From Chiloscyllium plagiosum (Eukaryota): 64,000 bases of DNA. Below are positions 23,270 to 55,392 of this stretch, one piece after another (the stretch's first letter is position 1; each line of letters opens with the position of its first letter). The translations under genes were made by a program, and so were the position numbers. The DNA lies in NCBI RefSeq assembly GCF_004010195.1, contig NC_057726.1, positions 69,002,458 to 69,066,457 of the forward strand, read 5' to 3'. The notes below the pieces were generated by a model, which was not told the origin of the DNA, did no database searches, and saw only the letters and a list, made by a program, of their open reading frames with translations.

Positions 23270-23428
23270 NNNNNNNNNNNNNNNNNNNNNNNNNNNNNNN
23301 NNNNNNNNNNNNNNNNNNNNNNNNNNNNNNNNNNNNNNNNNNNNNNNNNNNNNNNNNNNNNNNNNNNNNNNNNNNNNNNNNNNNNNNNNNNNNNNNNNNN
23401 NNNNNNNNNNNNNNNNNNNNNNNNNNNN
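23270..23428. other. Assembly gap (159 N)
   Basis: Run of N. Confidence 1.
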
Positions 23429-37786: not shown

Positions 37787-38070
37787 GGGAATTGCAAAAA
37801 GCTTTCAAAGAAAGAGAGATAAAAAAAAGAGTCTTCTATTAATTCAGCATTCAGATATGAGGTGAAGACTTCTAATGCAGTCCAACAGGAATAAATATAA
37901 ACCGTTTTAAAAATTGACTTTGTTCAGAAGATATCAGTCGAGATCATCTTTAGGATCAACACGTGCTGAAGCATAATCATATTGGACGAAGGAATAATCA
38001 ATTCTTGCCAATAGACGGACGTTGTGGTGAATTTACAGCAGAGCAGCCTCAGATTGGGTGAGATTCTGCA
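37787..38070 (-). pseudogene. Inverted relic of the receptor gene 5' end (proximal promoter, leader exon, intron 1, first ~14 nt of the V exon)
   Basis: Diverged reverse complement of 39188-39485. The minus-strand leader from 37980 reads MIMLQHVLILKMIST; its donor is changed GT>AT and its TATA is changed to TGTAAAT. The acceptor ctttgaaag is intact, but homology stops after AFCNS. Confidence 0.85.
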
Positions 38071-39178
38071 AAATCTCTGTAAAATTGCATGCATCAACAA
38101 CTTATACCGGAGTTAATGTGGTTTGCAAGCTTACATTTTCAAAATTCCTCCTGTTTTGATCCATGTTCTAATTTCCAATTCAATATGTTTACATTATCTT
38201 ACTAACCTGTTAATGTAAACTTGCTTGTTGAACCATTTAGGTTCCCGAAGAGTGACTGGATGGATACTAAGTGGGCCTTTGCTCTTCTGAGAGAGCCTAC
38301 AACTCGAGGTTGGGAGGGGAGGGAACGTTCAAAATAGAGAAAGGCCATCGAACACGGAAATTCGGAGGATTTCTTTTCTTTGGAAAGGTGTTCTTTAGAA
38401 TCATCTATCTTAGAGAACGATCCGGGTTTTTAAATATGTTGAAAGCAGAACAAGACAATTTTTTGATTTTCAAGTCGTTCAAAGGTTTTGTTTTGGTTGG
38501 GTTGGGGGGGGATGGGTGGTAATATTAAGAGAAAGTGGGAACACAATTCAAGTCCAAAATCAGATGAGTGAATTTATTGAATGGAAGGACGGGCTCGTAT
38601 GTCCAACTTGTCTACCCCTGATTCTATTCCCTAAGATATATGTTCTTAATATCCAACCTATAACAATCTATCGAAGGGTATAAACATATTACAGAGTCCG
38701 TTGATGAAAATCTGAATAAAATTAAACTGAAATCAAATCGAGTCCGGATAAAAAAGACTTCACACTATCACACGAATCAAAGGCAACCCATTAAAAACTT
38801 GCTGATTTCACATCGCCTGGTGGAGCAATTGCAGATGCAACGATTCAACTCGATCTCATATTTCTGTTAGTACTCTGTCGCTTTGTTTTATATTTTCAAC
38901 ATCCGCAGTACTTCGCAATTTTCCTTTGGCCTTGACAGCAGCTTGTTGGTTAGTTTCGGCAGAAGTGCCTTTGCTTTCGTTCCTCACCGCTCAATGTTCA
39001 AATCCAGGTCATCTACCTCAAAATATTTATATTTCAGGAAACTATTATAATAGAAACCTCAGTAAGCCAATAGGCTGGGTAGAACTTGACTGGTATGATC
39101 TTTATTGTAGTTCCTTCTCAAACCTTTCAAAGTTCACATGTACCACAGCACTTCACCAGTTCTTTCATGATTGGGTAT

Positions 39179-39227
39179 ATGCAAATGTGCAGAACCTCAC
39201 GCCATCTGAGGCCGCTCTGCTATAAAT
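39179..39227 (+). promoter_or_regulatory. Octamer (ATGCAAAT, 39179-39186) and TATA box (TATAAAT, 39221-39227) upstream of the leader exon
   Basis: Perfect octamer 99 nt and TATA 57 nt upstream of ATG 39278; E-box CATCTG at 39203; RUNX-type ACCACA at 39230. Confidence 0.6.
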
Positions 39228-39277
39228 TCACCACAACGTCCGTCTATTGGCAAGAATTGATTATTCCTTCATCCAGT

Positions 39278-39323
39278 ATGATAATATTTCAGCGCATGTT
39301 GGTCCTAGAGATGATTTGGACAG
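39278..39323 (+). CDS. Exon 1, signal peptide (MIIFQRMLVLEMIWT-A)
   Basis: ATG downstream of TATA; phase-1 donor CAG|GTATTG; 148-nt intron to the V exon; reading frame conserved in the inverted paralogous relic. Confidence 0.7.
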
Positions 39324-42300
39324 GTATTGTCTGAAAAAAGTCAATTTTTAAAACGGTCTTTATATTTATTCCTGCTCGACTGTACCATTCGACGTATTAG
39401 AAGTCTTCAAGTCATATCTGAATGTTGAATTAATAGAATGCATTATTTTTTTCTCTCTCTTTCTTTGAAAGCTTTTTGCTATTCCTATTTCCGGGTGTCA
39501 CAGGCGCCCCAACACATTATTCAGAATTTCGGTGCAAGTGTAACAGTTACTTGTGCGTTCAACATTCCGCCTGATGATTCCGAGGTCGATGTCTTGTGGT
39601 GGAAATTGGGCGATAATACATTTCTGCATCCGACCTCCGACGCTAGGAAACGGTATTTTAAGAGAAAGGGTCAGGGCACCTTACAGCTGCTTGACGTCCG
39701 TCTTGAAGATGCTGGAGTTTATTACTGTGGAGTCAGTCAGAATAGAGCGGCGATCAGCAACGGGACTGGAACGAGACTTGTTGTCCACAGTAAGTGTCAC
39801 TGTAGGCAAAGGAATTGTTAGAAATCTCGATAAGATTATTTCGCTGATTATTAATATTAAAATACATTCTAAAATTGGTTGAAAACAAAAAAAATTCAAA
39901 ATCACAGCATGTCAAGCAAGACCAAAGCTAAAGTCTGGAACAAAGAACAAAGAATATTACAGCACAGGAACAGGCCCTTCGGCCCTCCAAGCCTGCTCCA
40001 ATCCAGATCCTCTATCTAAACCTGTAGCCTAATTTTCAAGAGTCTGTATCTCTCTGCTCCGTGCCCATTCATTCCCTGTCCATCTAGATACATCTTAAAG
40101 GAAACTATCATGCCCACCTCTACCACCTCCACTGGCAACACGTTCCAGGCCCCCACCACCCTCTGTGGAAAAAACTTTCCGCCAGTTCTGCTGAAAAGTT
40201 TCCACTCTCACCTTGAACTCGTGACCCTAGGAATTGAGTCACTCACTCTGTGAAAAAGCTTCTTGCTATCCATCCTGTCTATACCTCTTATGATTTTGTC
40301 GACCTAAATCAGGTCTCCCCTCAACCACCATCTTTCGAATGAAAATCTATTCAATCCTTCTAATCTATTCAACTTCTCTCTTCATAGCTAGCCCCTCCAT
40401 ACCAGGCAACATCCAGGTGAACCTCTTCTGTACCCTCTCCAAAGCATCCAACGCCTTTTGATAACGTGCCAATCATAACTGTACGCAGTTTTCCAAATGT
40501 GGCTGAACCAAAGTCTTACACAACTGTAACTGTAGTGTGCCAGTTCTTATAATACCCCTTCGGATGAAAGAAAGATTGCCATATGCCTTCTTGACCACTC
40601 TATCTGCAGATGCTGGAACCTTCAGGATACAATGGACAAAAACACCCAGATCTCTCTGGACATCAATTTTCCCCAGGGCTTTACCATTTACCATAAAGTT
40701 CACTCGAAAACTGGATCTTCCAAAATACATCACCTCGCATGGATTGCACTCCCAGTGGTTCCTACAGACTGATGGATGCTCGACATAAACCTATGAGTAT
40801 AACTATTCCACCTAAACAGCATATTCCTGTGTGCTGCAGGGCAACTTAACATGGCCAATCCACTTAAGCTGCACATTTTTGGGTTTGTGAGAGGAAACTG
40901 TAGCATCCAGAGGAAACCCGTACAGACACAGGGAGAATGCACAAACTCCATACAGAGGCTGGAATTGAATCCTGGTCCCGGCTGCTGTGAAGCAGCTGTG
41001 CTAACCACCTTGAAGCCAAATGAATTGCATAAAACTTCTGCACTGAACAGAACAATTGCCTGAGCACAAAGTGACACTTGTGTAACTCTTATTTTTCCAA
41101 ATTAATTAAACAGAAATACTCAGTATTATTTGTTGGTTATGAGAGGTAATGATGTTCCAAATTGATGGCGTTGAACAATGTTATTCTTAATCCCATTACA
41201 GGTCCACCATCTACCCCGACGATACTTTCCAAAATGCCTGATGGAAGTTCAGACATCGATCTACACCTCGTGTGTGAAACAGTTGACTTTTACCCAGAGG
41301 GGATTACATTCAACTGGTACAAAAATTCAAGCAAGATAGCCACCGGGATAAAATCTACAGAGTACTTGACCGATGCGGGGCTATACCGAGCTTCCAGTAC
41401 GCTACAGGAATCACAGCCAGTCCAGAAAGACAACGCTTATATTTGTTTGGTATCTCACAGCACCCTCCAAAGTCCGAAATTATCTGTTTATTTGGAGTCT
41501 AGATCTAATTCAGGTAGGAAACCAATGGCTGGATTCTCATATATAAATATCCAATAATATTACAACTGAAGTCACATAGGAATAAAGCTAGAGCACCAAA
41601 TTTTACTTAGGTAGTAATTGGATACCACATATTCCGGTACTGAACAGGCGCATGCAAACTGGGTAAATATCACAGGAACAGGCCATTCAGCCAACCAGTC
41701 TGTGCAGATCATGGTGTCATTCTAAACTAATCCCATCTGCCTCACATGGTTTGGATTTCTCTATTCCCTGTCTGTTCATGGTCTGTCTAAATGCCTCTTA
41801 AACATTGTTGTCATTGTTGACTTCTCCACCTCCTCATGCTGCCTGGATTGCTGTATTCTTCCAGCATCTGCAGCTTTTTGTCTCTTCCACCTAACCTGGC
41901 AGAATGTTCCAGGCACTCTCTGTGAAATATTTTCCTCACACAGGTCTTTTAAATGTTGCCCTCTCACCTTAAACTTATTCACCCTAATATTTGACATTTC
42001 CACCCGTGGGGAAAAAAGACTCTGACTATCCACCTGTCGCCTCTTAGTGTCCTACGCTTGAGTGAATACAGTTCAAGTTTGTATAACCTCCCCTTGTAGC
42101 TAATACAGTCTAAAAGAGGCAGCATCTTGCTAAACTTCTTTTGCAATCTCTGAAAAGTCTGCTGATCCTTCCCACAGTTCGTCAACTAAAATGGCACGCA
42201 AGACTTCAAATGGAGATTTCAATAAAGTTTTACACACCTCCAAAATGACTTGCCAAGTTATATACTCAAAACCCTGACTGGCTGAACACCTCATTCCTGA

Positions 42301-45300
42301 TGAAGAGCTTACGCTTGAAACATCAACTCTCCTGCTGCACAGATGCTGCCTGACTGGCTGTGCTTTTCCCGTGCCACACTTTTTCACCCTGACTGATTAT
42401 GGGAAGCATGCCATATTGCTTCTTTTGTTGCTACTTTCAGGGAGCAATGGACATTGCATCCCAAGATGCCACTGTATAGCAATGCTCAGAAGGTTCCTGA
42501 CATTTCCTGCATCATTTCCTCTTGTATTTGACCTCTCAAAATGCACACCTCACATTTTTATGGATTAAATTCAATCTGTCACTTCCCTGCTCAACTTTCC
42601 AACTATTCTACATCCTTCTGTATTCTTTGAAAACATCCCTCACTATTCACAATTTTTGTGTCATCAGTGAATTTACTAATCAGACTGCTTACATTTTCAC
42701 CGAACTCATTATTTGTATCACAAATGACAGAGTTCCCAGCAGTGATCCTTCCACAACACTACTGGTCATAGGCATCCAGCCAGTAAAATATTACTGAACA
42801 ACTAACTTTGTCTTCTATGACCAAGCCAATTTTATATTCAACTTAAAAAGTCACTGTGGAGCCCATGTGATTTAATCTTCAATGCTCGAGGAAAGTCAAT
42901 GTACACTACTACAACTGTCCTACCCTCATTAATTACCTTTATCATTACCTTTAAACCCACCAACAAATTTCTGAGATAAAACCTCCCCTGCACAAAGCCA
43001 TGGTGATTATCCCAAACAAGTCTTATTCCCTAATACAGCTCATGCTTTTCTGAATGCAAGTAAGCCCTGACCCTAAAAGTCTTCTTCAGTAATTTCCTGA
43101 CTGGAGATGCAAGGTTCAATAGCTTACAATTTCCTGATAATCCTTGTTGTTCTTTTTATACAAAGGAAGAACATTGGCTTTACTTCAGTCTTATGGACCA
43201 CACCTAAGGCTGAAGAGGATACAAAGACCTCCATCAAGGCAAAACAATCTCCTCCCTTGCCTCCCGTAGTATCTTGGGATAGATCCCATCAGGTGTTGGG
43301 AATTTATCCATCATAATGTTTTCAAGACATCCAACATCTCCTCCGTCTCAATATTGGCATGCCATGCGATATCAACAATCTTACAATTGTCCATGTCTTT
43401 CTCTTCGGTGTATATCAATGCAGAACACTCAGCAGTTGCACTGTGGCTCAGTGGTTAGCACTGTTGCCTCACAGCATCAGGGATCCAGGTTTAATTCCAA
43501 CCTTGGATGACTGTCTGTTTGGAGTTTGTACATTCTCCCTGTGTGTGCGTGCATTTTCTGCCACAGTCCAAAGATGTGCAGATCAGGTGAATTGGCCTTC
43601 TAAATTGCCCATAGCGTTAGGTTCAGAGGAAAATGTGTGTGGGTGAGTGACTCTTTGGAGGGTCTGTGTGGACTTGTTGGGCCAAAGGGCCTGTTTCCAC
43701 ACTGTAGGGAATCTAATCTTAAAAATCTGACTCCTAGCAGAAATCCCTTCCTTCTTTCTTGAGTCGACCTTCCCTTTTCCGAGCTACCCTCCTTGTTCTA
43801 ATATGGTTATAGATTAGGATTCTCTTGATAAGGACATCTCAAGGCCGCTTTTAGAGCTCCTAATTTAGCATTTTCATTCTTTCCTACTTCTTTACTATTC
43901 CTCAAGGGCCCTGGCAGATTGCAGTTTCCTGAACTTTACTTCTGCTTCCTTTTTCTTTTTGACTAAATTTACAATATCTCTTATCATCCAGGGTTCCCAC
44001 ATTTTGTCATCTTTATCTTTCCTTTTCACACGATCATGCTGGTCCTAAGTTCTGATCTAAAATTTGGGTCAAAATCCTGGAATTCCCTCGCTAATGGCAT
44101 TTTGGTCAACCTACAACAGGTGGACTAAAACAGTACAAGAAGGCAACTCACCACCACCTTCTCAAGGCCAACTAAGGATGGGCAATAAATGCTGGCTGGC
44201 CATTATATCCACATTCCACAAAAATGAATAAATAAAAAGAAAAACTGACCTATAAATGGTTCCCATGTACCAGATATGGATTTACCCTCAAATAGTGGCC
44301 CCCAATCTAATTTCTCAACCTCCTGCCTAATGCTGTTGCAATTAACTTCTTCCAATTTCACAATTTCCCCGAAGGACTAGTTTTATCCTTGTTCACAACT
44401 ACCTTTAAACTTATGGAATTATGATCACTGTTCCCATATGTTCCCCCACGCAAACTTTGAACACCTGGCCAGGCTCATTACCAATTCAAACTCTATTGTG
44501 GCCCCTTACCTAGTTGGTATAGCTTCATATTGTTTCATGAAGCCCTTGTAGATGCAATTAAGTTGTTAAATCTTTCCATGACTGGTTTACATATTGGATC
44601 TTCGATCTCCTGTTGGCTATTGGGAATCCTATAGTGTAACTCCATCACTGTGACTGCAACTTCCTTATTCCTGATTTCTACCCTTATGGCTTCACCGGAT
44701 GAGCCTTCCAAATGTTGTCTCTTAGTGCAGTTGTGACATTCTCCTTTGTTAGTAATGTAGATCTCCAACCACTTCTATGTCCCTCTCCATCGTACCTTGT
44801 AACCTGAAATGCTGAGCTGCCAGTCCTGTCCTTTTCTCGACCAAGTCTCTGTATTGGCTATAATATGTAGTTCCATAAGCTCAGACTCTAAGCTTATCTA
44901 CCTTACCTGTTATGAATCTTACATTAAAATATCTACATTTAAGACCACAAGTCCCACCAAGTTTACTAACCTGGTCTTCCCTGTTGTTCCTATTAGACTT
45001 ACTTGACTTAACTTCTGCTTCCTTCTCAATTCCGCCATATGCTGGCCTACTGCCCTAGTTTGCATCCCCTGTCTCACCAGTTTACATTTCCTGAGTGTAC
45101 AAGCGAACCAAGCAAAGATACTTATGTCCCTCCAGTTTAAGTTCAACCCATCATTCTTGTACAAGCCCCTCCTACTCTGGAACCAATCCCAATGATCCAG
45201 GTATCTGAAGATTTCCACCCTACACCTGCTCCTTAATCATGCATCAACTTTACTATCTTCCTATTTCTGGCCTCACGAGCAGGTATCATGTGGAGTCATC

Positions 45301-48300
45301 TTTAGCTGACAACCCAATAAACCCTCCATCTTATCTTCCTATCTTACTCTTTAATTTCTCTTTGCTGCACCTCATTTCACTACCTGTCTTTGGCATGTGT
45401 TCTAGTATGGAACATGATCTCTGGCTGATCACCTTTCCATTTCAAAATGTCCTATGCCCACTCAGAGGCTACTAGGGAGGCAATTCTGCCACTAGGGAGG
45501 CAACACACCATCCTGGAGACTTGCTTGTGGCCACAGAAATGACTCATTTTGCCCTTGACTAAAGAATCCCCTATGACAATCACTTGTACAATGGATCCAA
45601 TTGTGGTGCCATTGATCTGGCTGCTGCTGTTACGTTCCCTGAGAGGTCGTCCTCCAACTCCAAAAAATATCCAAATGGTGCACCTGTTTGAGAGGGGAAT
45701 AACCAGAGGGGGCTCCCTCATTGCCTGCCTGTCCCTTCTGGTATTCATCTGGCTGAACCTCAGCCGTGACCACATCCCTGAAACTCCAGGCTATAACAAA
45801 GCAGGATTGTGCTGCCTGTGGTAATCTGTGCTCTCAAACACTGCATGATAACCATGTCTTTGCAGATGGGGACTGTGTACATCGACAGATACAATCAAAT
45901 GCAATAGGAATTTAAGGCAAAAATGCTTTACTCATAAACTAAATTCATATGTGAATTCATTAGCTCAGGAAATGGTTAAGTGAAGTAGAGAAGTGTTTAA
46001 AACCAAAATAAAAATAGCAAAATGAATAATAATGTACTGAAAAGTTGGGATCTGGTACTTCAAATGGAGTACAAGGACCAATCATCAGATAGAGCAGGTA
46101 GGCCAATTTGAGTTTCAAATACCAAAGGTTGGACCCCGTTTTCTTCATACGTTCGAAATAATCCGATGCAAACTCACAAAAAAGTGATGAGCCTAACCGA
46201 TACGAGCACTCAGACACAAGAGCAGGAGAAGGGAGCAGTTGGAGACAGTCACCATTACCTTAACGAGGAGATGGAAAGGCCTCTGACCTACAGTGGAGCA
46301 GTTCGGTCTGGGAAGTTGTTAACTCCTGCGTGAATCTGATCTGCGAAGGAGTGATTTGGGTTGAAGGTTATAAATTGTAAGCAATTCCCGAGGTGTCCCC
46401 AATTTAAGAAGCATCTGACCTTCGTCTCAGGGTTGGATGCTATAAATCATGAGTGAGGTCAATGACATTTACCTGGGAGTTGGAAAGACACACCGTTCAG
46501 CTGCTATAAACTGGCTAGCAGTGAGTTTGACATCACGCTGTAAAATTAATGAACTGATATGAAACTATATGAGAAGCTGTTCTGAAAATATTATGTCAGG
46601 AAAGCACATAGAGCAGCTAAGCGTAGATTTAATGATGAAATAATATGAAGAAGTGTAAGTCAAGACTAAATTAATAAAGTCATGTGAGAAATCCAAAATA
46701 GTAAAATGTTGGTGTAAGATAATTTTCAGAGAATGCAACTCAGCTCAGTCATGTCGACTCCGTGCCCTGTAATATGTGGGAAATCAGGCACTATCTCCGA
46801 GATGGCACGCTTTTCCCGACTAAATGTACTTCAGGTCAGCTCTGAGGAAGATTAACTATGATTTCTCTCCACACATTCTGCCGGATCTACTGAGCTTTTC
46901 CAGCAATTTCTGTTTTAGTTTGTGCTATTCTTCAGGCTTTCTATTTACAAATTCTTTTCTTCTCAACTTCTGTCCATGACCGCTTATCGATAACTCATTT
47001 TCGGTAAACTCATATTTACATAAACTAATCTTTCTGTAATTGATTCCAACTCTTCGCTGATTTCTGAGCAAGTAAGTTTCTTGAAACTTTCTGAGAATAG
47101 CCTTGAAACTTTTCCACTCATTAGTTACAGACCCAATGGCTAATGGTCGCACAGTGTCCTCAGGTTTGCTTTGACAATTTCTGTTTGTAGTAAGCACCAT
47201 TCCACCTGACACAGGGTACACTTCTATTGAAGATGGGCACGCTTTAAGCTCCATATCTAATCAAGCCTCAGAATCTCTTCCATTTTGAAAGGACTTCTCC
47301 CATTATGTTAAAAGATTAAGACTGTGAAATGCCTGCAGTGTGCTATCCTATTGTAGGAGGAACTGAGGACTGTAGATACTGGAGATCTGAGTCAAAACGT
47401 GTGCGCTGCTGAAGCACAGCCAGTCAGGCAGCATCCGAGGAGCAGGAGAGTCGATGTTTTGGGATAAGCCATTCATCAGGAACCTAGGGTAGGGGCGAGC
47501 AATTTCATGTCAGGGTAAATGATTTCAAAGGCGATATCTAACAGCACAGTTTAACTAAACAAAACATCCACGCTTCAATTCAAAGAAACAAGGCATGACG
47601 TAAAAATGAGGAAAGGTTTAATCGCTTCGATCTGTCTTGTGATATATTTTAATTTCACTCTAGTTTTCATGAGCAGTATCCAATTGCTAACTCTACAGCT
47701 TTCATGCTGACACAAAATGAATCAATTGTTGTATACATCGATAATTATGGATTTATCTCAGAAATCTTCCCAGCTGCCCTCATTAATCTTCTAGGTATCG
47801 ACATTAATTTTGATATTTTGGCGATTGGGTGCACAGTCGGCGGACTCGTCTGTCTAGTGCTGGGGGCGGTCATTGGAAAGCGATGCAAGGCACGTTCATG
47901 CAAAGGTAGAGGAGGTCTATGTTTACGCTGTCGGAACATTTTCAATGTGTAAAGAAGAAATGCTATTGTCAGTAGCTCCTAAACTGAGTTTAGATCGGAG
48001 TGGCGCTGGAAAAGCACAGCAGATCAGGCAGCATCCGAGGAGCAGGTAAATCGATGTTTAATATTTCTGATGAAGGGCTTTTTCCAGAAACGTCGATTTT
48101 CCTGCTCCTCGGATGCTGCCTGACCTGCTGTCCTTTTCCAGCACCACTCCGACCTAAACTCTGGTTTCCAGCATCTGCAGTCCTCACTTTTGCCTAGCTC
48201 CTAACTTGAGTACAAAAATTTCATCTTAATTTCATCTTAATCGAGAATAGAAAATTGGGTGACACATTGTACTAACATGAATAAATACTTATAATTTTTT

Positions 48301-51300
48301 TAATGCTATCATCTTTTTCATGTTTATGCTGAAGTATAGCTCCAATTCAGGATCCAAAATTATGAGCGCCTAGTGATTCCAATCCATTATATTTATGTAC
48401 AATAATGAATTAAGACGATATGTTTCATGGAAGTTGGATGTTTCTGTACCTCTCGCTTGGTCTGTAAAAAGAAAGCACACAATAATGTCTTGCAAATTAT
48501 ATTCCCAATGCACAGGGCCAAATCAAGATATGGCTCGACAATGTGAAGAAACGGTAAGTCCAATTATGTTAACACCCTTATAGAAAGTGTATTATTTATT
48601 TTGTATTGTGGAAGCAGTCTGTCATTTTATCGTACTTCCATTTTTATTCTGTTGCACAGGTTTAGGAGTGGGGAAAGAAGAGACATTGACACTAATCCCC
48701 ATTGTTGGTAGATTTATTGAATACTGGAGAAAAAGCAAAATACAGTGGCAGATCTGAATTAAATCAGAAAGTTTTGGAGAAACTGAGCACGTATAGACGC
48801 CACCAGTGGATAGAGAAGCAAGGTTAGCTGAAGACAACATGCCACTTCTTTGTAACTCTTTTGAAGCCTCAAGAGTTCAAAAGAGCTGTAAATGTTAATC
48901 TTGTTGCTGTATCCTGCTGCCAGACCTGTTGAGTTTCTGCTGTACTTTCTGATTGCACATCATCAATTTCAGGAATGACTTTGACTGAAAATTATGTGTA
49001 AAATAGCCAAGACTAAGCAACACACATGCACACAAGCATGACTGAAGTTCTGGAAAACCCTTTATATAAATCATCGAATCCCCACAGTGTAGAAACAGGC
49101 CATTTGGCCCAATAAGTCTCACTGATCCTCTAAGGGACAAACCACCCAGACTCAATCCCCTACTCTAAATTTCATAATCATTATGGTCCATGTTTAAAGA
49201 AAGTACAGTTTGTAATTTTAAGATTGCATTCAAGATCTTACTTCTCTTCCTATCACCTTTCACATAACTGACTTAATCCAGCAGACAAAGTAGCTTATTG
49301 GGCTTCCTGGTATTTACTCTAACTGAAAATTCAATGCCATATGTACTGTCTGGTGAAGATATAGCACAGCAAGTGACAACATTGAAATCTTCAGATTGAA
49401 ATAGTCTAAATCAAACTCCATAGAATATAAATCAAATGCTGTCAAAGAAAAGTCAGATTCCACTGCAGCCTGGAGCTGAACTTTCAGATAATTGTGTAAT
49501 CAATCATATACTGCTTTTATCTTTCATGGTTGTAGGAGTCATTGGTTTAGAACAAGATATGTCAGTGAGTGCAACAGTACTTTTTCAGATGATCTATTGA
49601 CAGTGGTGAGATTGAAGTTTTAAAGTGGTGTATGGGTTAAAAATCAAGCAGACTGCTTCAGAATGCATGGAGCTTATGTGTGTACTTGAGCTGCACATAT
49701 CCACGATGTGGTGAATATCCCTTTATAGTCTCAATTTGTGCTTTTTAAGTAGCAGGCATGTTTGAAGAGGCATGAGGTAAGTAGCTCAGAGCTGGCTATT
49801 TATCAGCTCAGGCCCGAATGTTATTCCAGTATGGACATGGAGTGTTTCAGTACTTCGGCAACATGACTGGTCATGAGCTCTGTGCATTCAGCTGGAACAT
49901 TCCAACTTCTTGGTGGAGTTAAGGTCATAGTTCAAGAAGCTCAAAATAATTCCTCCCATGACTCTAATCTTAGCAACTAATGCCATGATGGCCTGAGACT
50001 AAAATGATTGCTCTCCAGTCATCTTTACTTGTGATGAACGTAATTAACAGATAGCGTGTTCCCTCATTTTGATTCACTTAGTTTTTCCAGATGTCAAATG
50101 TTACCTTGATGTAAATTGCAGTCTTCTCGCCTCACCCCCTCAGTTTGACTGATTTGTCCATCCATGAATGATGAGATCAGTATTTGAGTTGCATTGGCAG
50201 TACTGGGCCATAGTGACAGCTTTTTTGATCGTGTAAGTGTTATTTCATAACACTTTACAATGCTAGACGAATTATGGAGATCAGTCTGACAAACGGTTGA
50301 TTGTTTAAGTTAAATTTGTCCTGATTTCTGTTCACAGAATGTACATTGAAAATGTGGCAGGGGGATGTCTGTATTTTAACTACTCTGAAACAACTGGCTG
50401 ACTGACTTCAGCTAGTTGGGGAATGTATTTTCATTAGAATTATGCATTGCTTTGGCTCAAAAAGACAGGTCACCTGAACATTCTCAAAGCCAACCAAGGG
50501 TGCGAAACAAATACTGATCCAGTGTGTGGCGGCCACATACCACGAGTGAATATACATTTTGAAATGTGAGGGTACATAGCCATTGAGCTAATCAAGAGGC
50601 TACAATGGTCTTACCAGGCCTAAAGAGTTATAATTGCATGTATCAAGCAATCAATGATAAATCAATTCTGGGACCAAAACAATGATACACACAAAGTATT
50701 GAATTTTATCTATAAAACAGTAGAATACAGTAGTAATAATATCAGTTAAACAGGAGATTACTTCTGATAAATTGCATTTTACACATTTCATCAAGGCTAA
50801 GAAATGTGAGGGTAATTAAGCAGTGAAAGTGGCACAGGAAACACAATATATTTCTTTTATTGTATGTCCAAGTTCTGATGAATAGTGGAGAAATTTGGTC
50901 CTTAAAAGAGGTTCTGGAAAGAAATGATTAGAACACTGTGAACATGAAACATTAATTTTAATTAAACTGTGAAAGATGTGTTTTGACATTCACAAAGATG
51001 TTTGGTGATCGCTGCAATGTGATTTTCTTCACCAGAAAAACAAACAAGCTAAAGAAACATCTGACCAGTGTAGAGGTCCTGATGAGGTGATTCAGGTTAG
51101 AAATTTATATTTGTTTCAGAAACAACTGAATACTGCAATAGAAAAACCTAATGTTTTTCTGTATCATACTGGCAAGGAAAATAAAATCACAGGCCTCAAT
51201 TTATGATCAATGAGTTTGAATTAGATGCAGATCATTTGCATGAGATTTCTGCGCGGTTGTCATCATACAAATGCAATGTGGACAAAATTAGAAACAGTAG

Positions 51301-52751
51301 ATAAAATTAGTTACAAGCTCAACAGATTCAAAAGTATATGCATTAGTTGTTTTTTTAAATATAAGCAAAATGAAGGATTTCAGTTTTCTAGGAAATTAAT
51401 ATAATCTGAATCACAGTGAATTGTTAAACTAACAAAGCAATGGTGAATGGTATGAACTGCAAGGAAGCAGATGGATATGGGAAAAGAACCAGACTCCGAA
51501 ATTGTGTGTTGTTTCCTCCTCTCATCTCACAGAAGGTTTGTTCAGCCCACAAAACTTTAAGTAAAATTCCAGGATTTTGACAAAAATTTGGAGTTACATG
51601 AGGCAGATCAGTAAGTTCAACAGTCACAAATGAAGACAACAGTTGTCACCATAATCAGTGTTGTGAGAATCAGCAAACAATGGATGTCATGCAAGTAGAA
51701 CAAGGAGAATAAGTTGGAATTCATAATACACATGGACAAAGATACCAAAACCATAAAACTGACTAGTGGGCAGAGAGCAGAGACACTCAAAATGTGTTAA
51801 AAGGTTGAGTTAAAAGTCAGTGAATGGAAGTTGAAATGACTGACAATAGATTCTCAGATATAGTGAGCTTTTCATGTATAATAAAAAAAATGAACAGGGC
51901 ACCAAAATGGCACCTACTCACATTTAGGGAGTAATTATCATTAATATGTCCACTGCCATTTTGCAGTGCGCACAGGAAAGTATTGATTGCACAAAATAAA
52001 TGGATATGCATTGATCTTGAATGAAAGTCATCTTCAGCAATTTAGAGACAAGATTTTGTCGACTCCCAGTGGAAGGTAATGCTTTAACTTAAAAGACAAA
52101 GAATCGTGTTATGGAATAAAAATACAATGAGAGATGACTTGTTTTAACCTTGTGTGCGAGGTCATGACTCTAAGTTGTACCACCCAAGTTTAACTAAAAG
52201 GATTTGAGTCAAGAAAGATACCTGACTGTTGCAATGCTAACATTAACAGATTTTCTTTTGTTTCTGGCTGTGAATGTACCTGAGTTTATGTATTAACCAC
52301 CAACTAACTGATAAATCTTTCTTGATGCACTGATCATTGAGACTGCAATTTAGGACTTGCGAAATATGAGCAAGTAGTATGTTAATTCCAAAAGATTTCA
52401 TATTGTTTGATGCAATTATAAAATGTAATGATGTTCTACTTTCAGCATAAGTATCATATTAATAACTAGTTAAACTTAGACCAACATAATGTGATGAACA
52501 ACAGCTTGCAACCAAAATACTTAATTTTTATATTTAATGATCTAAAAACTAATGGAATAATATTGGACTAATAAAATTCTGAATTGGTACAGATGCTGGA
52601 AATGACCGAAGAAAACAACATGGGTTACGCAGCTCTTAATTTGTTTAGTTCAGAAAAAAGACGGACGCACAGGCAACAGGAAGAATGTACACAGTATGCT
52701 GCAATTAAGACAGGCATGGATGGATCGCGAGATTTATCCAAAAAGACTTAA
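39278..52751 (+). CDS. Six-exon non-rearranging VJ-C1-TM immunoglobulin-superfamily receptor with an ITIM-like/ITSM tail (antigen-receptor-like / SIRP-like), 327 aa
   Basis: join(39278-39323,39472-39789,41202-41513,47795-47905,48516-48553,52593-52751) = 984 nt, open frame, all introns GT-AG, phases 1,1,1,1,0. Confidence 0.8.
39472..39789 (+). CDS. Exon 2, Ig V-set domain with a germline-joined J-like strand
   Basis: VSQAP...GASVTVTC...VLWWK...TLQLLDVRLEDAGVYYC...NGTGTRLVV; polypyrimidine tract plus aag| acceptor; A|GTAAGT donor. Confidence 0.95.
39940..41010 (-). mobile_element. Antisense CR1 3' fragment (39940-40750) and V-SINE (~40755-41010) in intron 2
   Basis: ORF 40473-40733 QRDLGVFVH...VVKKAYG...TLVQPHLENCVQL; SINE core on the minus strand. 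Confidence 0.8.
41202..41513 (+). CDS. Exon 3, Ig C1-set domain
   Basis: LVCETVDFYPEGITFNWYKN...GLYRASSTL...YICLVSHSTL (C-x4-FYP, W and Y-x-C-x-V-x-H motifs); acceptor ttacag|, donor CAG|GTAGGA. Confidence 0.95.
41665..45775 (-). mobile_element. Near full-length but decayed antisense CR1 LINE in intron 3, with a nested V-SINE (43432-43720, +) and an L2-like tail (~44060-44240)
   Basis: ORF1 SGNH-esterase motifs PLSNR..VIVIGDSLVKG..MVCCLP (45452-45775) and DGLNLNW (44919-45218); endonuclease EAIRVEIRNK..HYRIPNS (44535-44768); RT and 3' tail toward 41670. Confidence 0.8.
47795..47905 (+). CDS. Exon 4, transmembrane segment
   Basis: GIDINFD-ILAIGCTVGGLVCLVLGAVIG-KRCKARSCK: hydrophobic helix followed by a basic stop-transfer stretch; acceptor cttctag|, donor AAG|GTAGAG. 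Confidence 0.85.
47990..48194. mobile_element. Palindromic Penelope-derived insertion with a hammerhead-like core and an imperfect 17-bp target-site duplication (intron 4)
   Basis: Flanks tagctcctaaactgagt (47973-47989) and tagctcctaacttgagt (48195-48211); CTGATGA-aggg..tcca-GAAAC-GTC at 48067-48094. Confidence 0.7.
48516..48553 (+). CDS. Exon 5, short cytoplasmic exon (GPNQDMARQCEET)
   Basis: Acceptor cacag|, donor ACG|GTAAGT; converts phase 1 to phase 0 as the next exon requires. Confidence 0.7.
52593..52751 (+). CDS. Exon 6, terminal cytoplasmic exon with two tyrosine motifs
   Basis: MLEMTEENNMGYAALNLFSSEKRRTHRQQEECTQYAAIKTGMDGSRDLSKKT*; branch-like ACTAAT at 52567 with the first AG at 52591-52592; too short (52 aa) for the supplied ORF track. 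Confidence 0.8.
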   Translation: MLEMTEENNMGYAALNLFSSEKRRTHRQQEECTQYAAIKTGMDGSRDLSKKT

Positions 52752-53299
52752 AGTCAAATGATTAATCATATTAATGTTAATCCTTGTAGAATCCTGAAGT
52801 GTATTAACTAGAATTCTGGCACGGACTGAACCCAATATCAGCAAAGTATGAGAAACAGTATTGTCTTCCCTTTTATCAATCTGTTAAAGCATGTACTGAT
52901 GAGAATATTGTTGATTCCCTTATAATGTACAGTTACTTGAAACTGAATTCTGTGTATTTCTTTCTCAGTTGACCAAAGCAAGGTAACAAGTATTCTGAAG
53001 AACTGATACTTCAAGGGATCATGTTGTAAACTTGGGTGCAGTGTGATCATATGTTATCCCATTCAGAGAGTGGGCATTAGTTGTTTGTTCAGTATTCTTC
53101 TTTTGTTGTGTTTTATTTACCTTAACAAATCTCATAAATTGCCAGTGTCTTCATTTGATGTAGGACTATATGGAAATTTTAGTTTTCTTCCTTTTGATAT
53201 GTGTACTATAACATAAACATTACATTGGTTTTCAGTATGTCATCACATTTAGCAGGAAGAATTTGGTTATTTAAATATAAAAAATATTGCAGAAAGCTA

Positions 53300-54090
53300 C
53301 AAAACCGAGGGATCTGGGTGTCCTTGACGTACAAATCACAAAAACACGCATATCCAAGTTCAGCAAGTGATAGAGAGTGAAATTAAATATTAGCCTTAAT
53401 TTCAAGAGGAATGGAATATAAACTAAGGAGGTTTTGCAAAAACTAAGGCGGTTTTGCTGAAACTATACAGAGCACTGTTTGGATTACATATGGGATATTG
53501 TAAATAGATGCAGGAATAGTGTGGACGTGATGGGCTGAAGTGCCTTTTGCTGCATTGTGGACTCTGTGACTCTATCTATGGAAAGATATACTGACACTGG
53601 AGGCAGTCCAGGCAAGTTTCAGTACATTGATACCAGGTAGGAGGTCAAGCGCGCAGGAAGCTGTCTTATGGGGAAAGGTTCAATCAATCAGTCTTGTAAT
53701 CAATGGAATTTGGAAAAATGAGAGACAACCTGGTTGAAACATGCAAAATCTTTCAGGACTTGACAGGGTCAATGCAGAAAGATAGTTTTCCTTGTGGGCA
53801 AGTCTGGGGTCAAAGGACATAACCTCAGAATAAGGAGTCACACATTTAAGATGGAGATAAGCAGGAATTTCTTGTCTCGAAGGGTACTGACTCTGTGGGA
53901 TTCTTTACCACAGGGACCTGCTGAGGTGGTTAAGTATATTTAATGTTCAGATGAACGGATTTTTAATTAGTAAAAAGGCAGAAAAATGCACTTGATGATT
54001 TTCAGATCAGCCGTGATGTCACTGAATAGTGGAGCAGACTTGATGGGCTGAATGATCTACTTCTGTTCCTATGTTTTATGGTTTTATAGT
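53300..54090 (+). mobile_element. CR1 LINE 3' fragment
   Basis: RDLGVL trace at 53308; typical CR1 3' UTR and tail. Confidence 0.75.
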
Positions 54091-54676: not shown

Positions 54677-55392
54677 ATGTATAGTAGTGTGGCTAGTCCT
54701 TTGGGTTGTGGCATGTCCTCATTCCGTTGTCACAAGGACTAGCCACACTACCATACATCAAGAGCATTTCCGAACTGACAACCAGACTACTGCGACCACT
54801 AGGACTCATAACAGCACACAAACCAACAGCCACTCTCAGACAACAACTCATCAGGACGATGGACCCGATACCCAGCATGAGCAAAAGAAATGTAGTGTAC
54901 AAAATCCCATGCAAGGACTGCACAAAACACTACATAGGACAAACAGGAAGACAGCTAATGATCCACATCCATGAACACCAACTAGCCACGAAGCGACACG
55001 ACCAGCTATCCTTAGTAGCCACACACTCAGATGACAAGCAACATGAATTCGACTGTGACAACACTATTATTATAGGACAAGCCAAACAGAGAACAGCCAG
55101 GGAATTCCTAGAGGCATGGCATGCATCCACAGATTCAATCAATAAGCACATCGACCTGGACCCAATATACCGGCCACTGCAGCGGACAGCTGGAACTGAC
55201 AACCGGAAGCAGCAGATACAAATCACTATAAATCCCGGAGGAAACATCACAAAAGCGCTTCACAGGAGGGTCCCAAGCACTGAGGCTGTCACCTAGACAG
55301 GGGACGAAACGTCTGCAACTCAAATTCCCAGTTCGGTGAACAGAACCACAACAACGAGCACCCGAGCTACAAATCTTCTCACAAACTTTGAA
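54677..55392 (+). mobile_element. 5'-truncated Penelope element encoding a GIY-YIG endonuclease, with 5' inversion and a terminal hammerhead-like motif
   Basis: ORF 54706-55296 NVVYKIPCKDCTKHYIGQTGRQL..IHEHQ..H.FD..R..LEAWH; 25-bp inverted repeat 54677-54701/54734-54758; CTGAGGC-TGTC..GAC-GAAACGTC at ~55280-55313. Confidence 0.9.

What the first reader, a model, noticed from the sequence alone, without database searches (positions are those of the whole stretch)
39278..52751. Intact non-rearranging antigen-receptor-like gene (germline VJ + single C1 + TM) wired to an inhibitory ITIM/ITSM tail
Seen in sequence: six exons splice in frame into 327 aa (leader, V with the J-like GTGTRLVV in the same exon, C1-set domain, uncharged TM core, two-tyrosine tail). 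No RSS or D/J segments lie between V and C. Established: C1-set domains occur in a limited set of jawed-vertebrate proteins (Ig, TCR, MHC, B2M, tapasin, SIRPs, B7-H6), and VJ-C1 is the IgL/TCR chain layout, but those chains rearrange and lack inhibitory tails. SIRP-alpha is VJ-C1-C1 with ITIM/ITSM motifs, and NKp30 is a single VJ with a charged TM. Inference: this is a germline-encoded inhibitory receptor with the layout expected of the pre-RAG ancestor of antigen receptors, or a one-C1 SIRP-like lineage in cartilaginous fish. Non-rearranging VJ-C1 genes are known as a class (for example avian PRARP and amphibian or shark MHC-region genes), so I cannot say from sequence alone that this member is new.
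Basis: partly seen in the sequence, partly recalled or inferred. Interest (0 to 1): 0.9.

Follow-up and report, generated by a model that had tools for sequence, protein, structure and literature searches.

The report
Shark SIRP-like one-C1 inhibitory receptor gene
This is an intact bamboo-shark gene for a cell-surface receptor built like a non-rearranging antibody light chain or T-cell-receptor chain but carrying the inhibitory tail of the mammalian 'don't-eat-me' receptor SIRP-alpha; public annotation already predicts it, but it has not been studied.

Summary
Six exons with canonical splice sites join in frame into 327 codons: leader, V with a J-like GTGTRLVV in the same exon, one C1-set domain, an uncharged TM, a 38-nt exon and a two-tyrosine tail. 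No RSS-like site lies in the gene.

The gene is not new to databases. It is RefSeq LOC122558695 of Chiloscyllium plagiosum, named "uncharacterized protein". Isoform X1 matches all six exons; isoform X2 skips the TM exon.

It sits in a nine-row clade of similar shark proteins, within a family found in sharks, rays and a chimaera. NCBI names the family inconsistently: SIRP-alpha-like, Ig lambda-like, CD276, tapasin-related, NCR3LG1-like.

The ectodomain scores about equally against Ig lambda light chains and SIRP-alpha. The tail aligns with the first ITIM/ITSM pair of mammalian SIRP-alpha, far above shuffles. The C1 tree puts the family beside SIRP domain 2 only weakly (75/79), and an Ig-light-chain/UrIg grouping is not rejected (p 0.14).

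Best reading: a one-C1, SIRP-related inhibitory receptor. The "pre-RAG ancestor" reading is not shown.

Expression is untested (no RNA reads on the exons).

The scan's first readers noted the same kind of gene 14 times on other DNA of this genome; none was followed up.

The parts
39278..39323 (+). Exon 1, coding part: start codon and most of the signal peptide (MIIFQRMLVLEMIWT plus the first base of a split codon); donor gt at 39324-25
   Evidence: Read. Matches residues 38-52 of RefSeq P0181 and the N-termini of the 327-aa proteins P0164, P0165 and P0180. The signal-peptide role is inferred from hydrophobicity and position.
39472..39789 (+). Exon 2: end of the leader plus a V-set domain, with a J-like G strand (NGTGTRLVV) in the same exon; phase 1 at both ends
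   Evidence: Pfam V-set E 3.7e-9. Borders read. Identical to RefSeq P0166/P0181 inside the borders. No RSS-like site in the gene.
41202..41513 (+). Exon 3: single C1-set constant domain (LVCETVDFYPE...YICLVSH); phase 1 at both ends
   Evidence: Pfam C1-set E 5.4e-12, 46.3 bits, while C2-set_3 stays under its cut-off. Ig constant domains are the best PDB matches. Falls in a starred family clade in the C1 tree.
47795..47905 (+). Exon 4: stalk end, transmembrane helix ILAIGCTVGGLVCLVLGAVIG with no charged residue, and a basic juxtamembrane KRCKARSCK. It is 111 nt, so skipping it keeps the reading frame.
   Evidence: Read. 100% match to P0181. Absent from RefSeq isoform X2, P0166. TM string tabulated. 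SNP 47839 G>A (Gly to Ser, my reading) in DNA run X4.
48516..48553 (+). Exon 5: 38-nt cytoplasmic exon (GPNQDMARQCEET with the split codon); goes from phase 1 to phase 0
   Evidence: Located with P0166, P0164 and P0165 by tblastn. Borders ag 48514-15 and gt 48554-55 read.
52593..52751 (+). Exon 6, coding part: tail with an ITIM-like MGYAAL and an ITSM TQYAAI, tyrosines 23 residues apart; stop at 52749-51
   Evidence: Read. 100% match to P0181. Motifs and spacing across relatives. Similar to SIRP-alpha tails above shuffles. SNP 52620 A>G (Met to Val, giving VGYAAL; my reading) in run X4.
52752..53405 (+). Probable 3' UTR, up to the only ATTAAA signal found (53382) between the stop codon and 54300; no AATAAA there
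   Evidence: The extent is inferred; no RNA reads were laid on it.

Best explanation
This is an intact, germline-joined (non-rearranging) gene for a type I membrane protein: signal peptide, one V domain with a built-in J-like strand, one C1-set domain, an uncharged transmembrane helix and a 66-residue tail. It is RefSeq LOC122558695 of the whitespotted bamboo shark.

It belongs to a conserved group of similar shark proteins, inside a larger family of V-C1 receptors present in sharks, rays and a chimaera. That family is related to the SIRPs of bony vertebrates.

Proposed mechanism (inferred, not shown):
1. The V domain binds a still unknown cell-surface or pathogen ligand.
2. A Src-family kinase phosphorylates the two tail tyrosines: (M/V)GYAAL and TQYAAI, 23 residues apart.
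3. The doubly phosphorylated pair docks the tandem SH2 domains of SHP-1/SHP-2-type phosphatases.
4. These dampen activation of the leukocyte that carries the receptor, as SIRP-alpha does.

Skipping the 111-nt TM exon keeps the frame and would give a soluble form. RefSeq predicts this isoform; no RNA was seen here.
For: Shown:
- Gene structure and intact frame and a match to RefSeq P0181/P0166.
- V-set and C1-set domains.
- No RSS-like site.
- A TM helix without a charged residue.

Conservation:
- The C1 exon sits in a starred nine-row clade (100/99) with Hemiscyllium, Rhincodon, Stegostoma, Mustelus, Scyliorhinus, Heterodontus, Pristiophorus and Heptranchias rows.
- Ten proteins of this group were tabulated. 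The ITSM TxYAA[IV], 23 residues after the first tail tyrosine, is present in 9 of 10. The motif [LVM]xYAAL is present in 8 of 10.

SIRP relation:
- Smith-Waterman scores of the last exon against four mammalian SIRP-alpha tails are 43-52, against shuffle means of 21-23 (sd about 4). Shuffles reached the observed score 1, 1, 0 and 0 times in 2000.
- Long-tailed family members align over all four SIRP-alpha tyrosine motifs.
- BLASTP of P0181 against SIRP-alpha P0218 gives a V-end-plus-C1 HSP at E 1.9e-17 and a C1-TM-tail HSP at E 6e-4.
- The family profile scores SIRP-alpha d1-d2 at 65.2 bits and d3 at 43.8 bits; SIRP-alpha ranks 5th of 8522 chains.
- The nearest named ESM-Atlas clusters are SIRP-alpha-like and SIRP-alpha, both at 0.96.
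- The family V profile scores SIRP V domains at 17-29 bits, gives no hit on the V domain of three UrIg-like proteins, and 12-18 bits on N-terminal V domains of unnamed long multi-C1 proteins that I take to be Ig heavy chains.
- In the ML tree the family C1 domains and the SIRP d2-type C1 domains form one side of a branch.

From papers: ITIMs recruit SHP-1/SHP-2 (passage of PMC12975943). ITIM and ITSM consensus forms come from a passage of PMC11599192.
Against: - No transcript evidence was obtained. No reads lay on any exon in two single-cell RNA runs, of which only about 2% and 6% were read.
- The branch joining the family to SIRP d2 is weak (75/79). A grouping with Ig light-chain and UrIg C1 domains is not rejected (AU p 0.14).
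- The ectodomain is as similar to Ig lambda as to SIRP-alpha: 67.5 against 65.2 bits with the profile, and 50-56 against 52.2 bits with the single sequence.
- SIRPs have two C1 domains. The two V-C1-C1 family members owe their second C1 to recent internal duplication.
- Tyrosine motifs are short and can converge. No other ITIM receptor tails were available as a control.
- The reference allele has Met at position -2 of the first motif, outside the strict ITIM consensus.
- Database searches with a family tail and with the family profile did not reach tetrapod SIRPs.
- Synteny with the SIRP locus could not be examined.
- Ligand, phosphorylation and phosphatase binding are all untested.
Confidence: 0.6

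Rival explanations
1. An independent antigen-receptor-like lineage. On this reading the family descends from the same VJ-C1 stock as Ig light chains, TCR chains and UrIg, and is no closer to SIRPs than they are. The tail likeness to SIRP-alpha would be convergence of short tyrosine motifs.
For: - The best V-plus-C stretch of the family profile in PDB is a lambda light chain (67.5 bits), with SIRP-alpha at 65.2.
- With the single protein, lambda chains score 50-56 bits and SIRP-alpha 52.2.
- NCBI names several members "immunoglobulin lambda-1 light chain-like".
- The AU test does not reject a clade of the family with Ig light-chain and UrIg C1 domains (p 0.14).
- The single-C1 layout is that of IgL and TCR chains.
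Against: - Tail similarity is collinear over two motifs in this gene, and over four in its paralogues, with near-identical spacing, and lies far above shuffles.
- BLASTP HSPs run without a break from C1 through TM into the tail.
- The free ML tree joins the family to SIRP d2, not to IgL or UrIg.
- The family V profile prefers SIRP V domains to UrIg V domains and to the V domains of the presumed heavy chains.
Confidence: 0.2
2. A B7-family-type molecule (B7-H6, CD276 or PD-L1-like). On this reading it is a V-C ligand shown to other cells' receptors, with the tail playing only a secondary signalling role.
For: - The best single-domain PDB matches of the V exon are PD-L1 V domains (E about 2e-6).
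- NCBI names related shark proteins "CD276 antigen homolog" and "natural cytotoxicity triggering receptor 3 ligand 1-like".
- An unchecked first-reader note reports a VJ-C1 receptor next to a B7-like gene elsewhere in this genome.
Against: - The C domain passes Pfam C1-set (46.3 bits), while the B7/butyrophilin-type C2-set_3 stays under its cut-off (15.8 bits against 27).
- The V domain has a J-like GxGTxLxV strand.
- The nearest named Atlas clusters are SIRP; CD80 comes lower, at 0.94.
- The conserved ITIM/ITSM pair with fixed spacing fits a receptor.
- No B7-H6 chain appeared among the 60 best PDB matches in any search.
Confidence: 0.07
3. A silent or decaying gene: intact by chance or only recently disabled in regulation, with the RefSeq models being ab initio predictions.
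For: - No RNA reads on any exon in the two RNA runs laid.
- An inverted partial copy of the 5' end lies 1.1 kb upstream, which shows local rearrangement.
- Unchecked first-reader notes mention disabled family members elsewhere in the genome.
Against: - Only about 2% and 6% of the two runs were read, their tissue is unknown, and one run laid nothing at all, so this is no test.
- The 327-codon frame is open and all ten splice sites are canonical.
- Similar proteins with the same layout and motifs come from several shark genera.
- The two coding differences in another DNA run both change to residues seen in related sharks: Val in Hemiscyllium, Ser in Hemiscyllium, Rhincodon and Stegostoma.
Confidence: 0.08

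Closest known systems
SIRP-alpha (SHPS-1 / PTPNS1 / CD172a) and the SIRP family
   Same: - Germline V domain with a J-like strand followed by C1-set domain(s), a single TM helix and a tyrosine-motif tail.
- The window's tail aligns with the first pair of SIRP-alpha motifs (ITYADL...TEYASI); the tyrosines are 23 residues apart here and 24 in the SIRP-alpha tails printed (my count).
- Tail similarity is above shuffles, and C1-TM-tail alignments are collinear.
- The ML tree puts the C1 beside SIRP d2.
- Nearest named Atlas clusters are SIRP.
- Some family members have four or six tail tyrosine motifs.
   Different: - One C1 domain instead of two.
- One motif pair instead of two in this gene.
- The family C1 domains form their own starred clade, outside the starred SIRP d2 and d3 clades.
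- Support for the sister relation is weak (75/79).
- No CD47 binding is known, and synteny is untested.
- The family's own V-C1-C1 members arose by recent duplication of the family C1.
Ig lambda/kappa light chains and TCR chains
   Same: - V-J-C1 order with a single C1.
- Highest-scoring V-plus-C stretch in PDB: lambda 67.5 bits, kappa 62.3 bits with the family profile.
- TCR chains are also membrane-anchored (established knowledge).
   Different: - V and J are one exon here and no RSS is present, so there is no somatic rearrangement.
- A long signalling tail with ITIM/ITSM motifs, instead of no tail or a very short one.
- No charged TM residue for CD3-type partners.
UrIg and UrIg2 (non-rearranging shark antibody-like genes; PMC12227049 and PMC10751288, passages read)
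   Same: - Elasmobranch, non-rearranging, with a single-exon VJ followed by C1-type domains.
- UrIg2 V-C1 scores 52.2 bits with the family profile.
   Different: - UrIg2 has many C domains: the epaulette-shark gene model has eleven, two more than nurse shark UrIg2 (passage). The solved piece forms disulfide-linked dimers.
- The window gene has one C1, an inhibitory tail and no extracellular stalk cysteine.
- UrIg-like C1, C2 and C3 domains fall in their own starred clades, apart from the family.
- The family V profile finds no hit on UrIg-like V domains.
NKp30 (NCR3)
   Same: A germline VJ domain. The ...NGTRLVV ending is very like what I recall of NKp30's G strand; this is recalled and was not tested.
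   Different: NKp30 has no C domain and a charged TM that couples to ITAM adaptors (recalled). Here there is a C1, an uncharged TM and inhibitory motifs. No NKp30 chain was among the 60 best PDB matches of the V exon.
B7 family (PD-L1, CD276, B7-H6)
   Same: V-C-TM layout. PD-L1 V is the best single-domain PDB match of the V exon. NCBI names some related proteins after this family.
   Different: The C domain is C1-set by Pfam, not C2-set_3. The V domain has a J-like strand. The tail carries an ITIM/ITSM pair.
PD-1-type ITIM + ITSM tails (function only)
   Same: One ITIM-like motif followed by one ITSM, the arrangement described for PD-1 (passage of PMC11599192).
   Different: PD-1 has a single V domain and no C1. 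No sequence relation was tested.

Membership tests
SIRP family | Ectodomain of one V-set domain followed by two C1-set domains | tested here: not met
   Only one C1 exon lies between the V and TM exons. The RefSeq product P0181 has V plus one C1.
SIRP family | Germline (non-rearranging) V domain with a J-like G strand | tested here: met
   NGTGTRLVV lies inside the V exon. No RSS-like site was found.
SIRP family | SIRP-alpha-type cytoplasmic tail with paired tyrosine motifs | tested here: met
   One pair is present. It aligns with the first pair of four mammalian SIRP-alpha tails, and shuffles reached the score 1, 1, 0 and 0 times in 2000. SIRP-alpha has two pairs, as do several paralogues.
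SIRP family | C1 domain groups with SIRP C1 domains in a phylogeny | tested here: inconclusive
   The family plus d2-type SIRP C1 domains form one side of a branch at 75/79 support. The alternative grouping with IgL and UrIg C1 domains is not rejected, p-AU 0.14.
SIRP family | Position in the conserved SIRP locus (synteny) | not testable with these tools
The window holds no other recognisable gene.
SIRP family | Binding of CD47 by the V domain | not testable with these tools
   Needs a binding experiment.
Rearranging antigen receptor chains (IgL, TCR) | Separate V and J segments flanked by RSS | tested here: not met
   V and J-like parts form one open exon. The RSS scan gave 0 hits.
Rearranging antigen receptor chains (IgL, TCR) | V followed by a single C1-set domain | tested here: met
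   Pfam V-set and C1-set on consecutive exons.
UrIg / UrIg2 | VJ followed by several C domains | tested here: not met
   There is one C1 exon only. UrIg-like C domains form separate starred clades. The definition comes from passages of PMC12227049.
B7 family | IgV without a J-like strand plus a B7-type IgC (Pfam C2-set_2 or C2-set_3) | tested here: not met
   C2-set_3 scores 15.8 bits, under its cut-off of 27, while C1-set scores 46.3 bits. A J-like strand is present. That B7 V domains lack a J-like strand is recalled.
NKp30 (NCR3) | A single VJ domain, no C domain, and a charged TM residue | tested here: not met
   A C1 exon is present. The TM string has no charged residue. The definition is recalled.
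ITIM/ITSM inhibitory receptors (functional class) | ITIM (I/V/L/S)xYxx(I/V/L) and ITSM TxYxx(V/I) in the tail | tested here: met
   The ITSM TQYAAI is met. The first motif is MGYAAL in the window (Met is outside the strict set) but VGYAAL in DNA run X4 and in Hemiscyllium, and LxYAAL in six other proteins of the group. Consensus forms partly from PMC11599192, partly recalled.
ITIM/ITSM inhibitory receptors (functional class) | Tyrosine phosphorylation and recruitment of SHP-1/SHP-2 | not testable with these tools
   Needs biochemistry.

The most novel reading that the evidence does not exclude
The cartilaginous-fish V(J)-C1-TM family, with this conserved gene as a slowly evolving member, is the sister of all bony-vertebrate SIRPs and keeps the ancestral two-domain form. 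That would mean a membrane-bound, germline VJ-C1 chain wired to an ITIM/ITSM tail already existed in the first jawed vertebrates. The antigen-receptor-shaped chain would then have begun as an inhibitory innate receptor, making this one of the closest living models of the kind of gene the RAG transposon split. Its single C1 could still pair as TCR and Ig constant domains do.
Probability: 0.2. Interest if true: 0.75.

Novelty: new variant of a known kind. Interest (0 to 1): 0.45.

Why it matters
C1-set domains are confined to antigen receptors, MHC molecules and a few associated proteins. SIRPs have been argued to be close to the antigen-receptor precursor (PMC2785349, passages read).

A conserved family in sharks, rays and a chimaera joins the light-chain/TCR layout (VJ plus one C1 plus TM) to a SIRP-alpha-type inhibitory tail. 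This would extend SIRP-related genes to cartilaginous fish. It also offers a concrete, testable comparator for UrIg and UrIg2 in the debate on what the RAG transposon invaded.

The practical value is more modest. The inconsistent automatic names (SIRP-alpha-like, Ig lambda-like, CD276, tapasin-related, NCR3LG1-like, uncharacterized) hide one family. Naming it would tidy shark immune-gene annotation.

The gene itself is already predicted in RefSeq, so the finding is a classification and a hypothesis, not a discovery of unknown sequence.

Tried and rejected
1. A wrong candidate for the small cytoplasmic exon. Scoring 316 ag...gt/gc candidates against tail pieces of two relatives put 51624-51685/51694 (VTNEDNS...) first, tied with an unrelated candidate and with a poor polypyrimidine tract. 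It was dropped when the closest relatives placed the exon at 48516-48553.

2. RNA evidence. One read-laying run on 47700-53600 used two raw single-cell polyA RNA runs, one contig run and one DNA run. RNA reads lay only on a repeat at about 47900-48290. One RNA run laid nothing. This is no test of expression.

3. Reaching tetrapod SIRPs from the shark family by database search failed. The family profile found 24 proteins: 22 from cartilaginous fish and 2 weak teleost hits. The tail of P0059 found only itself and P0041. SIRP-alpha sequences were instead fetched with a pig SIRP-beta-like hit as query.

ORFs of 130 aa or more in the window (10 listed) show no other gene.

The ESM Atlas's own model of P0181 is poor (pLDDT 0.64).

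6. C1 tree.
- 80 rows, 101 columns.
- Left out: P0181 itself (the window exon stands for it), the second and third copies of repeated Ig light-chain constant domains, and domain hits under 60 residues.
- The backbone is unresolved (24 of 77 inner branches open), so it cannot settle SIRP against IgL.
- No V tree was built, because no IgL, TCR, NKp30 or B7 V domains were in hand. Profile scores were used instead.

7. The Ig-type octamer ATGCAAAT at 39179 occurs 13 times in the window, against 5.9 expected. Its place upstream of the start codon is weak evidence on its own.

8. Literature.
- Six answered searches listed no paper on a cartilaginous-fish V-C1-ITIM or SIRP-like family.
- Passages were read in PMC12227049, PMC10751288, PMC11599192, PMC2785349 and PMC12975943. 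PMC10530332 (the UrIg paper) is not held.
- Subscription journals are mostly missing from the library, and supplements were closed and not asked for. The supplementary gene tables of PMC12227049 and PMC10751288 might list such genes.

Full report
WHAT IS THERE

The stretch 39278-52751 holds one gene on the + strand. Reading the sequence gives six coding exons with ag/gt borders:
- 39278-39323: start codon and leader.
- 39472-39789: end of the leader plus the V domain.
- 41202-41513: the C1 domain.
- 47795-47905: stalk, TM helix and basic anchor.
- 48516-48553: a 38-nt cytoplasmic exon.
- 52593-52751: the tail, with the stop codon at 52749-51.

The first four introns are phase 1. The 111-nt TM exon can therefore be skipped without a frame shift.

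Pfam, run exon by exon, gives V-set E 3.7e-9 (37.2 bits, cut-off 26) and C1-set E 5.4e-12 (46.3 bits, cut-off 21). The B7/butyrophilin-type C2-set_3 stays under its cut-off. The V exon ends ...YYCGVSQNRAAISNGTGTRLVVH, so a J-like strand sits in the same exon.

A scan of 39000-53000 on both strands for RSS-like sites found none. The mean in 200 shuffles was 0.135. The TM string ILAIGCTVGGLVCLVLGAVIG has no charged residue. The tail holds MGYAAL and TQYAAI, with the tyrosines 23 residues apart. tblastn of the four larger exons against the window finds no second copy.

Each was searched on its own, and the joined step was left out.

IT IS ALREADY A PREDICTED GENE

A search of 1.84 billion representative proteins with the C1 exon gave 522 proteins at E up to 0.001. 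Among them were dozens of 230-410-aa proteins with the same V-C1-TM-tail layout.

A profile of 17 such proteins plus the four window exons then found 24 proteins: 22 from cartilaginous fish and 2 weak teleost hits. One of them, P0166, is identical to the window's exons.

The cluster look-up names it XP_043563425.1, "uncharacterized protein LOC122558695 isoform X2", of Chiloscyllium plagiosum. Isoform X1 is P0181, XP_043563424.1, 364 aa.
- P0181 maps to all six exons. It adds 37 residues from an upstream ATG at 39167. The 327-aa proteins of Hemiscyllium, Rhincodon and Stegostoma do not have this extension.
- Isoform X2 goes from the C1 exon straight to the 38-nt exon, with no TM. A Pristiophorus model has the same shape.
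- Whether these isoforms rest on RNA I cannot tell.

So the window most likely comes from C. plagiosum or a very close relative.

THE FAMILY

Named members come from these groups:
- Sharks: Chiloscyllium, Hemiscyllium, Rhincodon, Stegostoma, Mustelus, Scyliorhinus, Heterodontus, Pristiophorus, Heptranchias.
- Rays: Hypanus, Amblyraja.
- A chimaera: Callorhinchus.

NCBI's automatic names disagree:
- tyrosine-protein phosphatase non-receptor type substrate 1-like (that is, SIRP-alpha-like);
- signal-regulatory protein beta-1-like;
- immunoglobulin lambda-1 light chain-like;
- CD276 antigen homolog;
- tapasin-related protein-like;
- natural cytotoxicity triggering receptor 3 ligand 1-like;
- uncharacterized.

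In the aligned members, tails vary from none to six tyrosine motifs. Two members are V-C1-C1 (Amblyraja P0013 and C. plagiosum P0167). In the tree their two C1 domains are near-identical sisters, so these are recent internal duplications.

In an ML tree of 80 C1 domains, the 31 family rows form a starred clade (100/98). The window's exon lies in a starred nine-row clade (100/99). Its branching runs Hemiscyllium; Rhincodon plus Stegostoma; Scyliorhinus plus Mustelus; Heterodontus; Pristiophorus; Heptranchias. This looks like the shark species tree (my judgement), and suggests an old, conserved orthologue group rather than a fast-turnover copy.

Ten proteins of this group were tabulated:
- 9 of 10 keep TxYAA[IV] exactly 23 residues after the first tail tyrosine.
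- 8 of 10 keep [LVM]xYAAL.
- The exceptions are the S. canicula model, whose C-terminus differs altogether, and S. torazame, which has LVYAVP.

First-reader notes of this scan, all unchecked, report the same kind of gene 14 times on other DNA of this genome. Nine of them lie on the same piece, from about 7.5 Mb before the window to 1.6 Mb after it.

WHAT IT IS CLOSEST TO

Ectodomain.
- With the family profile, the best V-plus-C stretches in PDB are a lambda light chain (67.5 bits), SIRP-alpha d1-d2 (65.2 bits, plus 43.8 for d3), a kappa chain (62.3 bits) and UrIg2 V-C1 (52.2 bits).
- With RefSeq's P0181 alone, lambda chains score 50-56 bits and SIRP-alpha 52.2 bits.
- The V exon alone matches PD-L1 V domains best among single domains, at E about 2e-6.
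- The C1 exon alone matches Ig constant domains best.
- On the ectodomain, therefore, the gene is about as far from Ig light chains as from SIRPs. This explains the mixed names.

Tail. Four mammalian SIRP-alpha proteins were fetched.
- The window's last exon scores 43-52 against their tails. Shuffle means are 21-23 with sd about 4. Shuffles reached the observed score 1, 1, 0 and 0 times in 2000.
- The alignment puts NNMGYAALNL on NDITYADLNL and CTQYAAI on HTEYASI.
- Long-tailed family members align over all four SIRP-alpha motifs.
- BLASTP HSPs run from C1 through TM into the tail. Examples are P0041 131-359 on SIRP-alpha 247-502 at E 1.5e-14, and P0181 179-353 on 270-460 at E 6e-4.

Other leads.
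- The nearest named ESM-Atlas clusters are SIRP-alpha-like and SIRP-alpha (both 0.96), then Ig kappa-like (0.95).
- A V-domain profile of the family scores SIRP V domains at 17-29 bits.
- It gives no hit on the V domain of three UrIg-like proteins.
- It gives 12-18 bits on N-terminal V domains of unnamed long multi-C1 proteins, which I take to be Ig heavy chains.

Tree. The family plus the d2-type SIRP C1 domains (mammal, coelacanth, lungfish) form one side of a branch, but only at 75/79 support. Holding the family together with Ig light-chain and UrIg C1 domains costs 15.7 log-likelihood units and is not rejected (p-AU 0.14).

MECHANISM

The architecture and the conservation of the motif pair are shown. 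The rest is inferred by analogy. ITIM-bearing SIRP-alpha recruits SHP-1 and SHP-2 after tyrosine phosphorylation (passage of PMC12975943). An ITIM followed by an ITSM is the PD-1-type arrangement (passage of PMC11599192).

I propose that ligand binding by the V domain leads to phosphorylation of both tyrosines and docking of a tandem-SH2 phosphatase. The invariant 23-residue spacing is what such a bidentate contact would conserve; that link is my own knowledge, not a tool result.

The reference allele has Met at position -2 of the first motif. A DNA run of the same species label has A>G at 52620, which gives Val and a canonical ITIM. The same run has G>A at 47839, which gives Ser in the TM. 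Both residues are those of related sharks.

WHAT REMAINS OPEN

- Expression: the single read-laying run found no RNA reads on any exon, with about 2% and 6% of the two runs read. This is no test.
- Ligand and signalling: untested.
- Literature: six searches listed no description of this family. The UrIg/UrIg2 papers concern multi-C genes, and PMC12227049 does not contain the word SIRP (one search counts; passages). The library lacks most subscription journals, and supplements were closed.

VERDICT

The gene is a publicly predicted but unstudied member of a family found across cartilaginous fish. I class it as a new variant of a known kind (SIRP-type inhibitory IgSF receptors), with interest 0.45.

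The bolder reading is that this family keeps the ancestral two-domain form of a VJ-C1 inhibitory receptor close to the antigen-receptor precursor. The data do not exclude it. I give it about 0.2.

Noticed in passing
window 37788-38070 versus 39188-39485: An inverted partial copy of the gene's 5' end (upstream region, leader exon, intron 1 and the first 14 nt of the V exon). It shows as three inverted-repeat pairs of 176, 56 and 40 nt at 86-95% complementarity. No second V exon follows it.
   Followed up: partly
window 39179-39186 and 39219-39228: An Ig-type octamer ATGCAAAT lies 92 nt before the start codon, and a TATAAA-like string lies between them. The octamer occurs 13 times in the window, against 5.9 expected (2 of 100 shuffles reach 13), so its position alone is weak evidence. 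RefSeq's upstream start codon (39167) lies in this same stretch.
   Followed up: partly
window 47897-48290: A very high-copy repeat in intron 4. Summed word depth in the DNA run is up to about 1.9 million, and reads from the single-cell RNA run lie on it in both directions. It was the only part of the laid stretch with RNA reads.
   Followed up: no
window 47839 and 52620: Two coding differences in a DNA run of the same species label: Gly to Ser in the TM helix, and Met to Val at position -2 of the first tyrosine motif. Both change to residues seen in related sharks.
   Followed up: partly
P0013 (Amblyraja radiata) and P0167 (Chiloscyllium plagiosum): Family members with two near-identical C1 domains, pointing to independent recent duplications of the C1 exon in a ray and in the bamboo shark.
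   Followed up: partly
P0166 (C. plagiosum isoform X2) and P0173 (Pristiophorus japonicus): Predicted products that lack the TM exon but keep the tail, in two distant sharks. This may be a conserved soluble isoform or a shared annotation artefact.
   Followed up: no
window 23270-23428: A run of 159 N (assembly gap or masked stretch); left alone.
   Followed up: no
window 54706-55296 and 33561-33998: ORFs of 196 and 145 aa that look like fragments of transposable-element proteins (my impression only). No other cellular gene was seen in the window.
   Followed up: no
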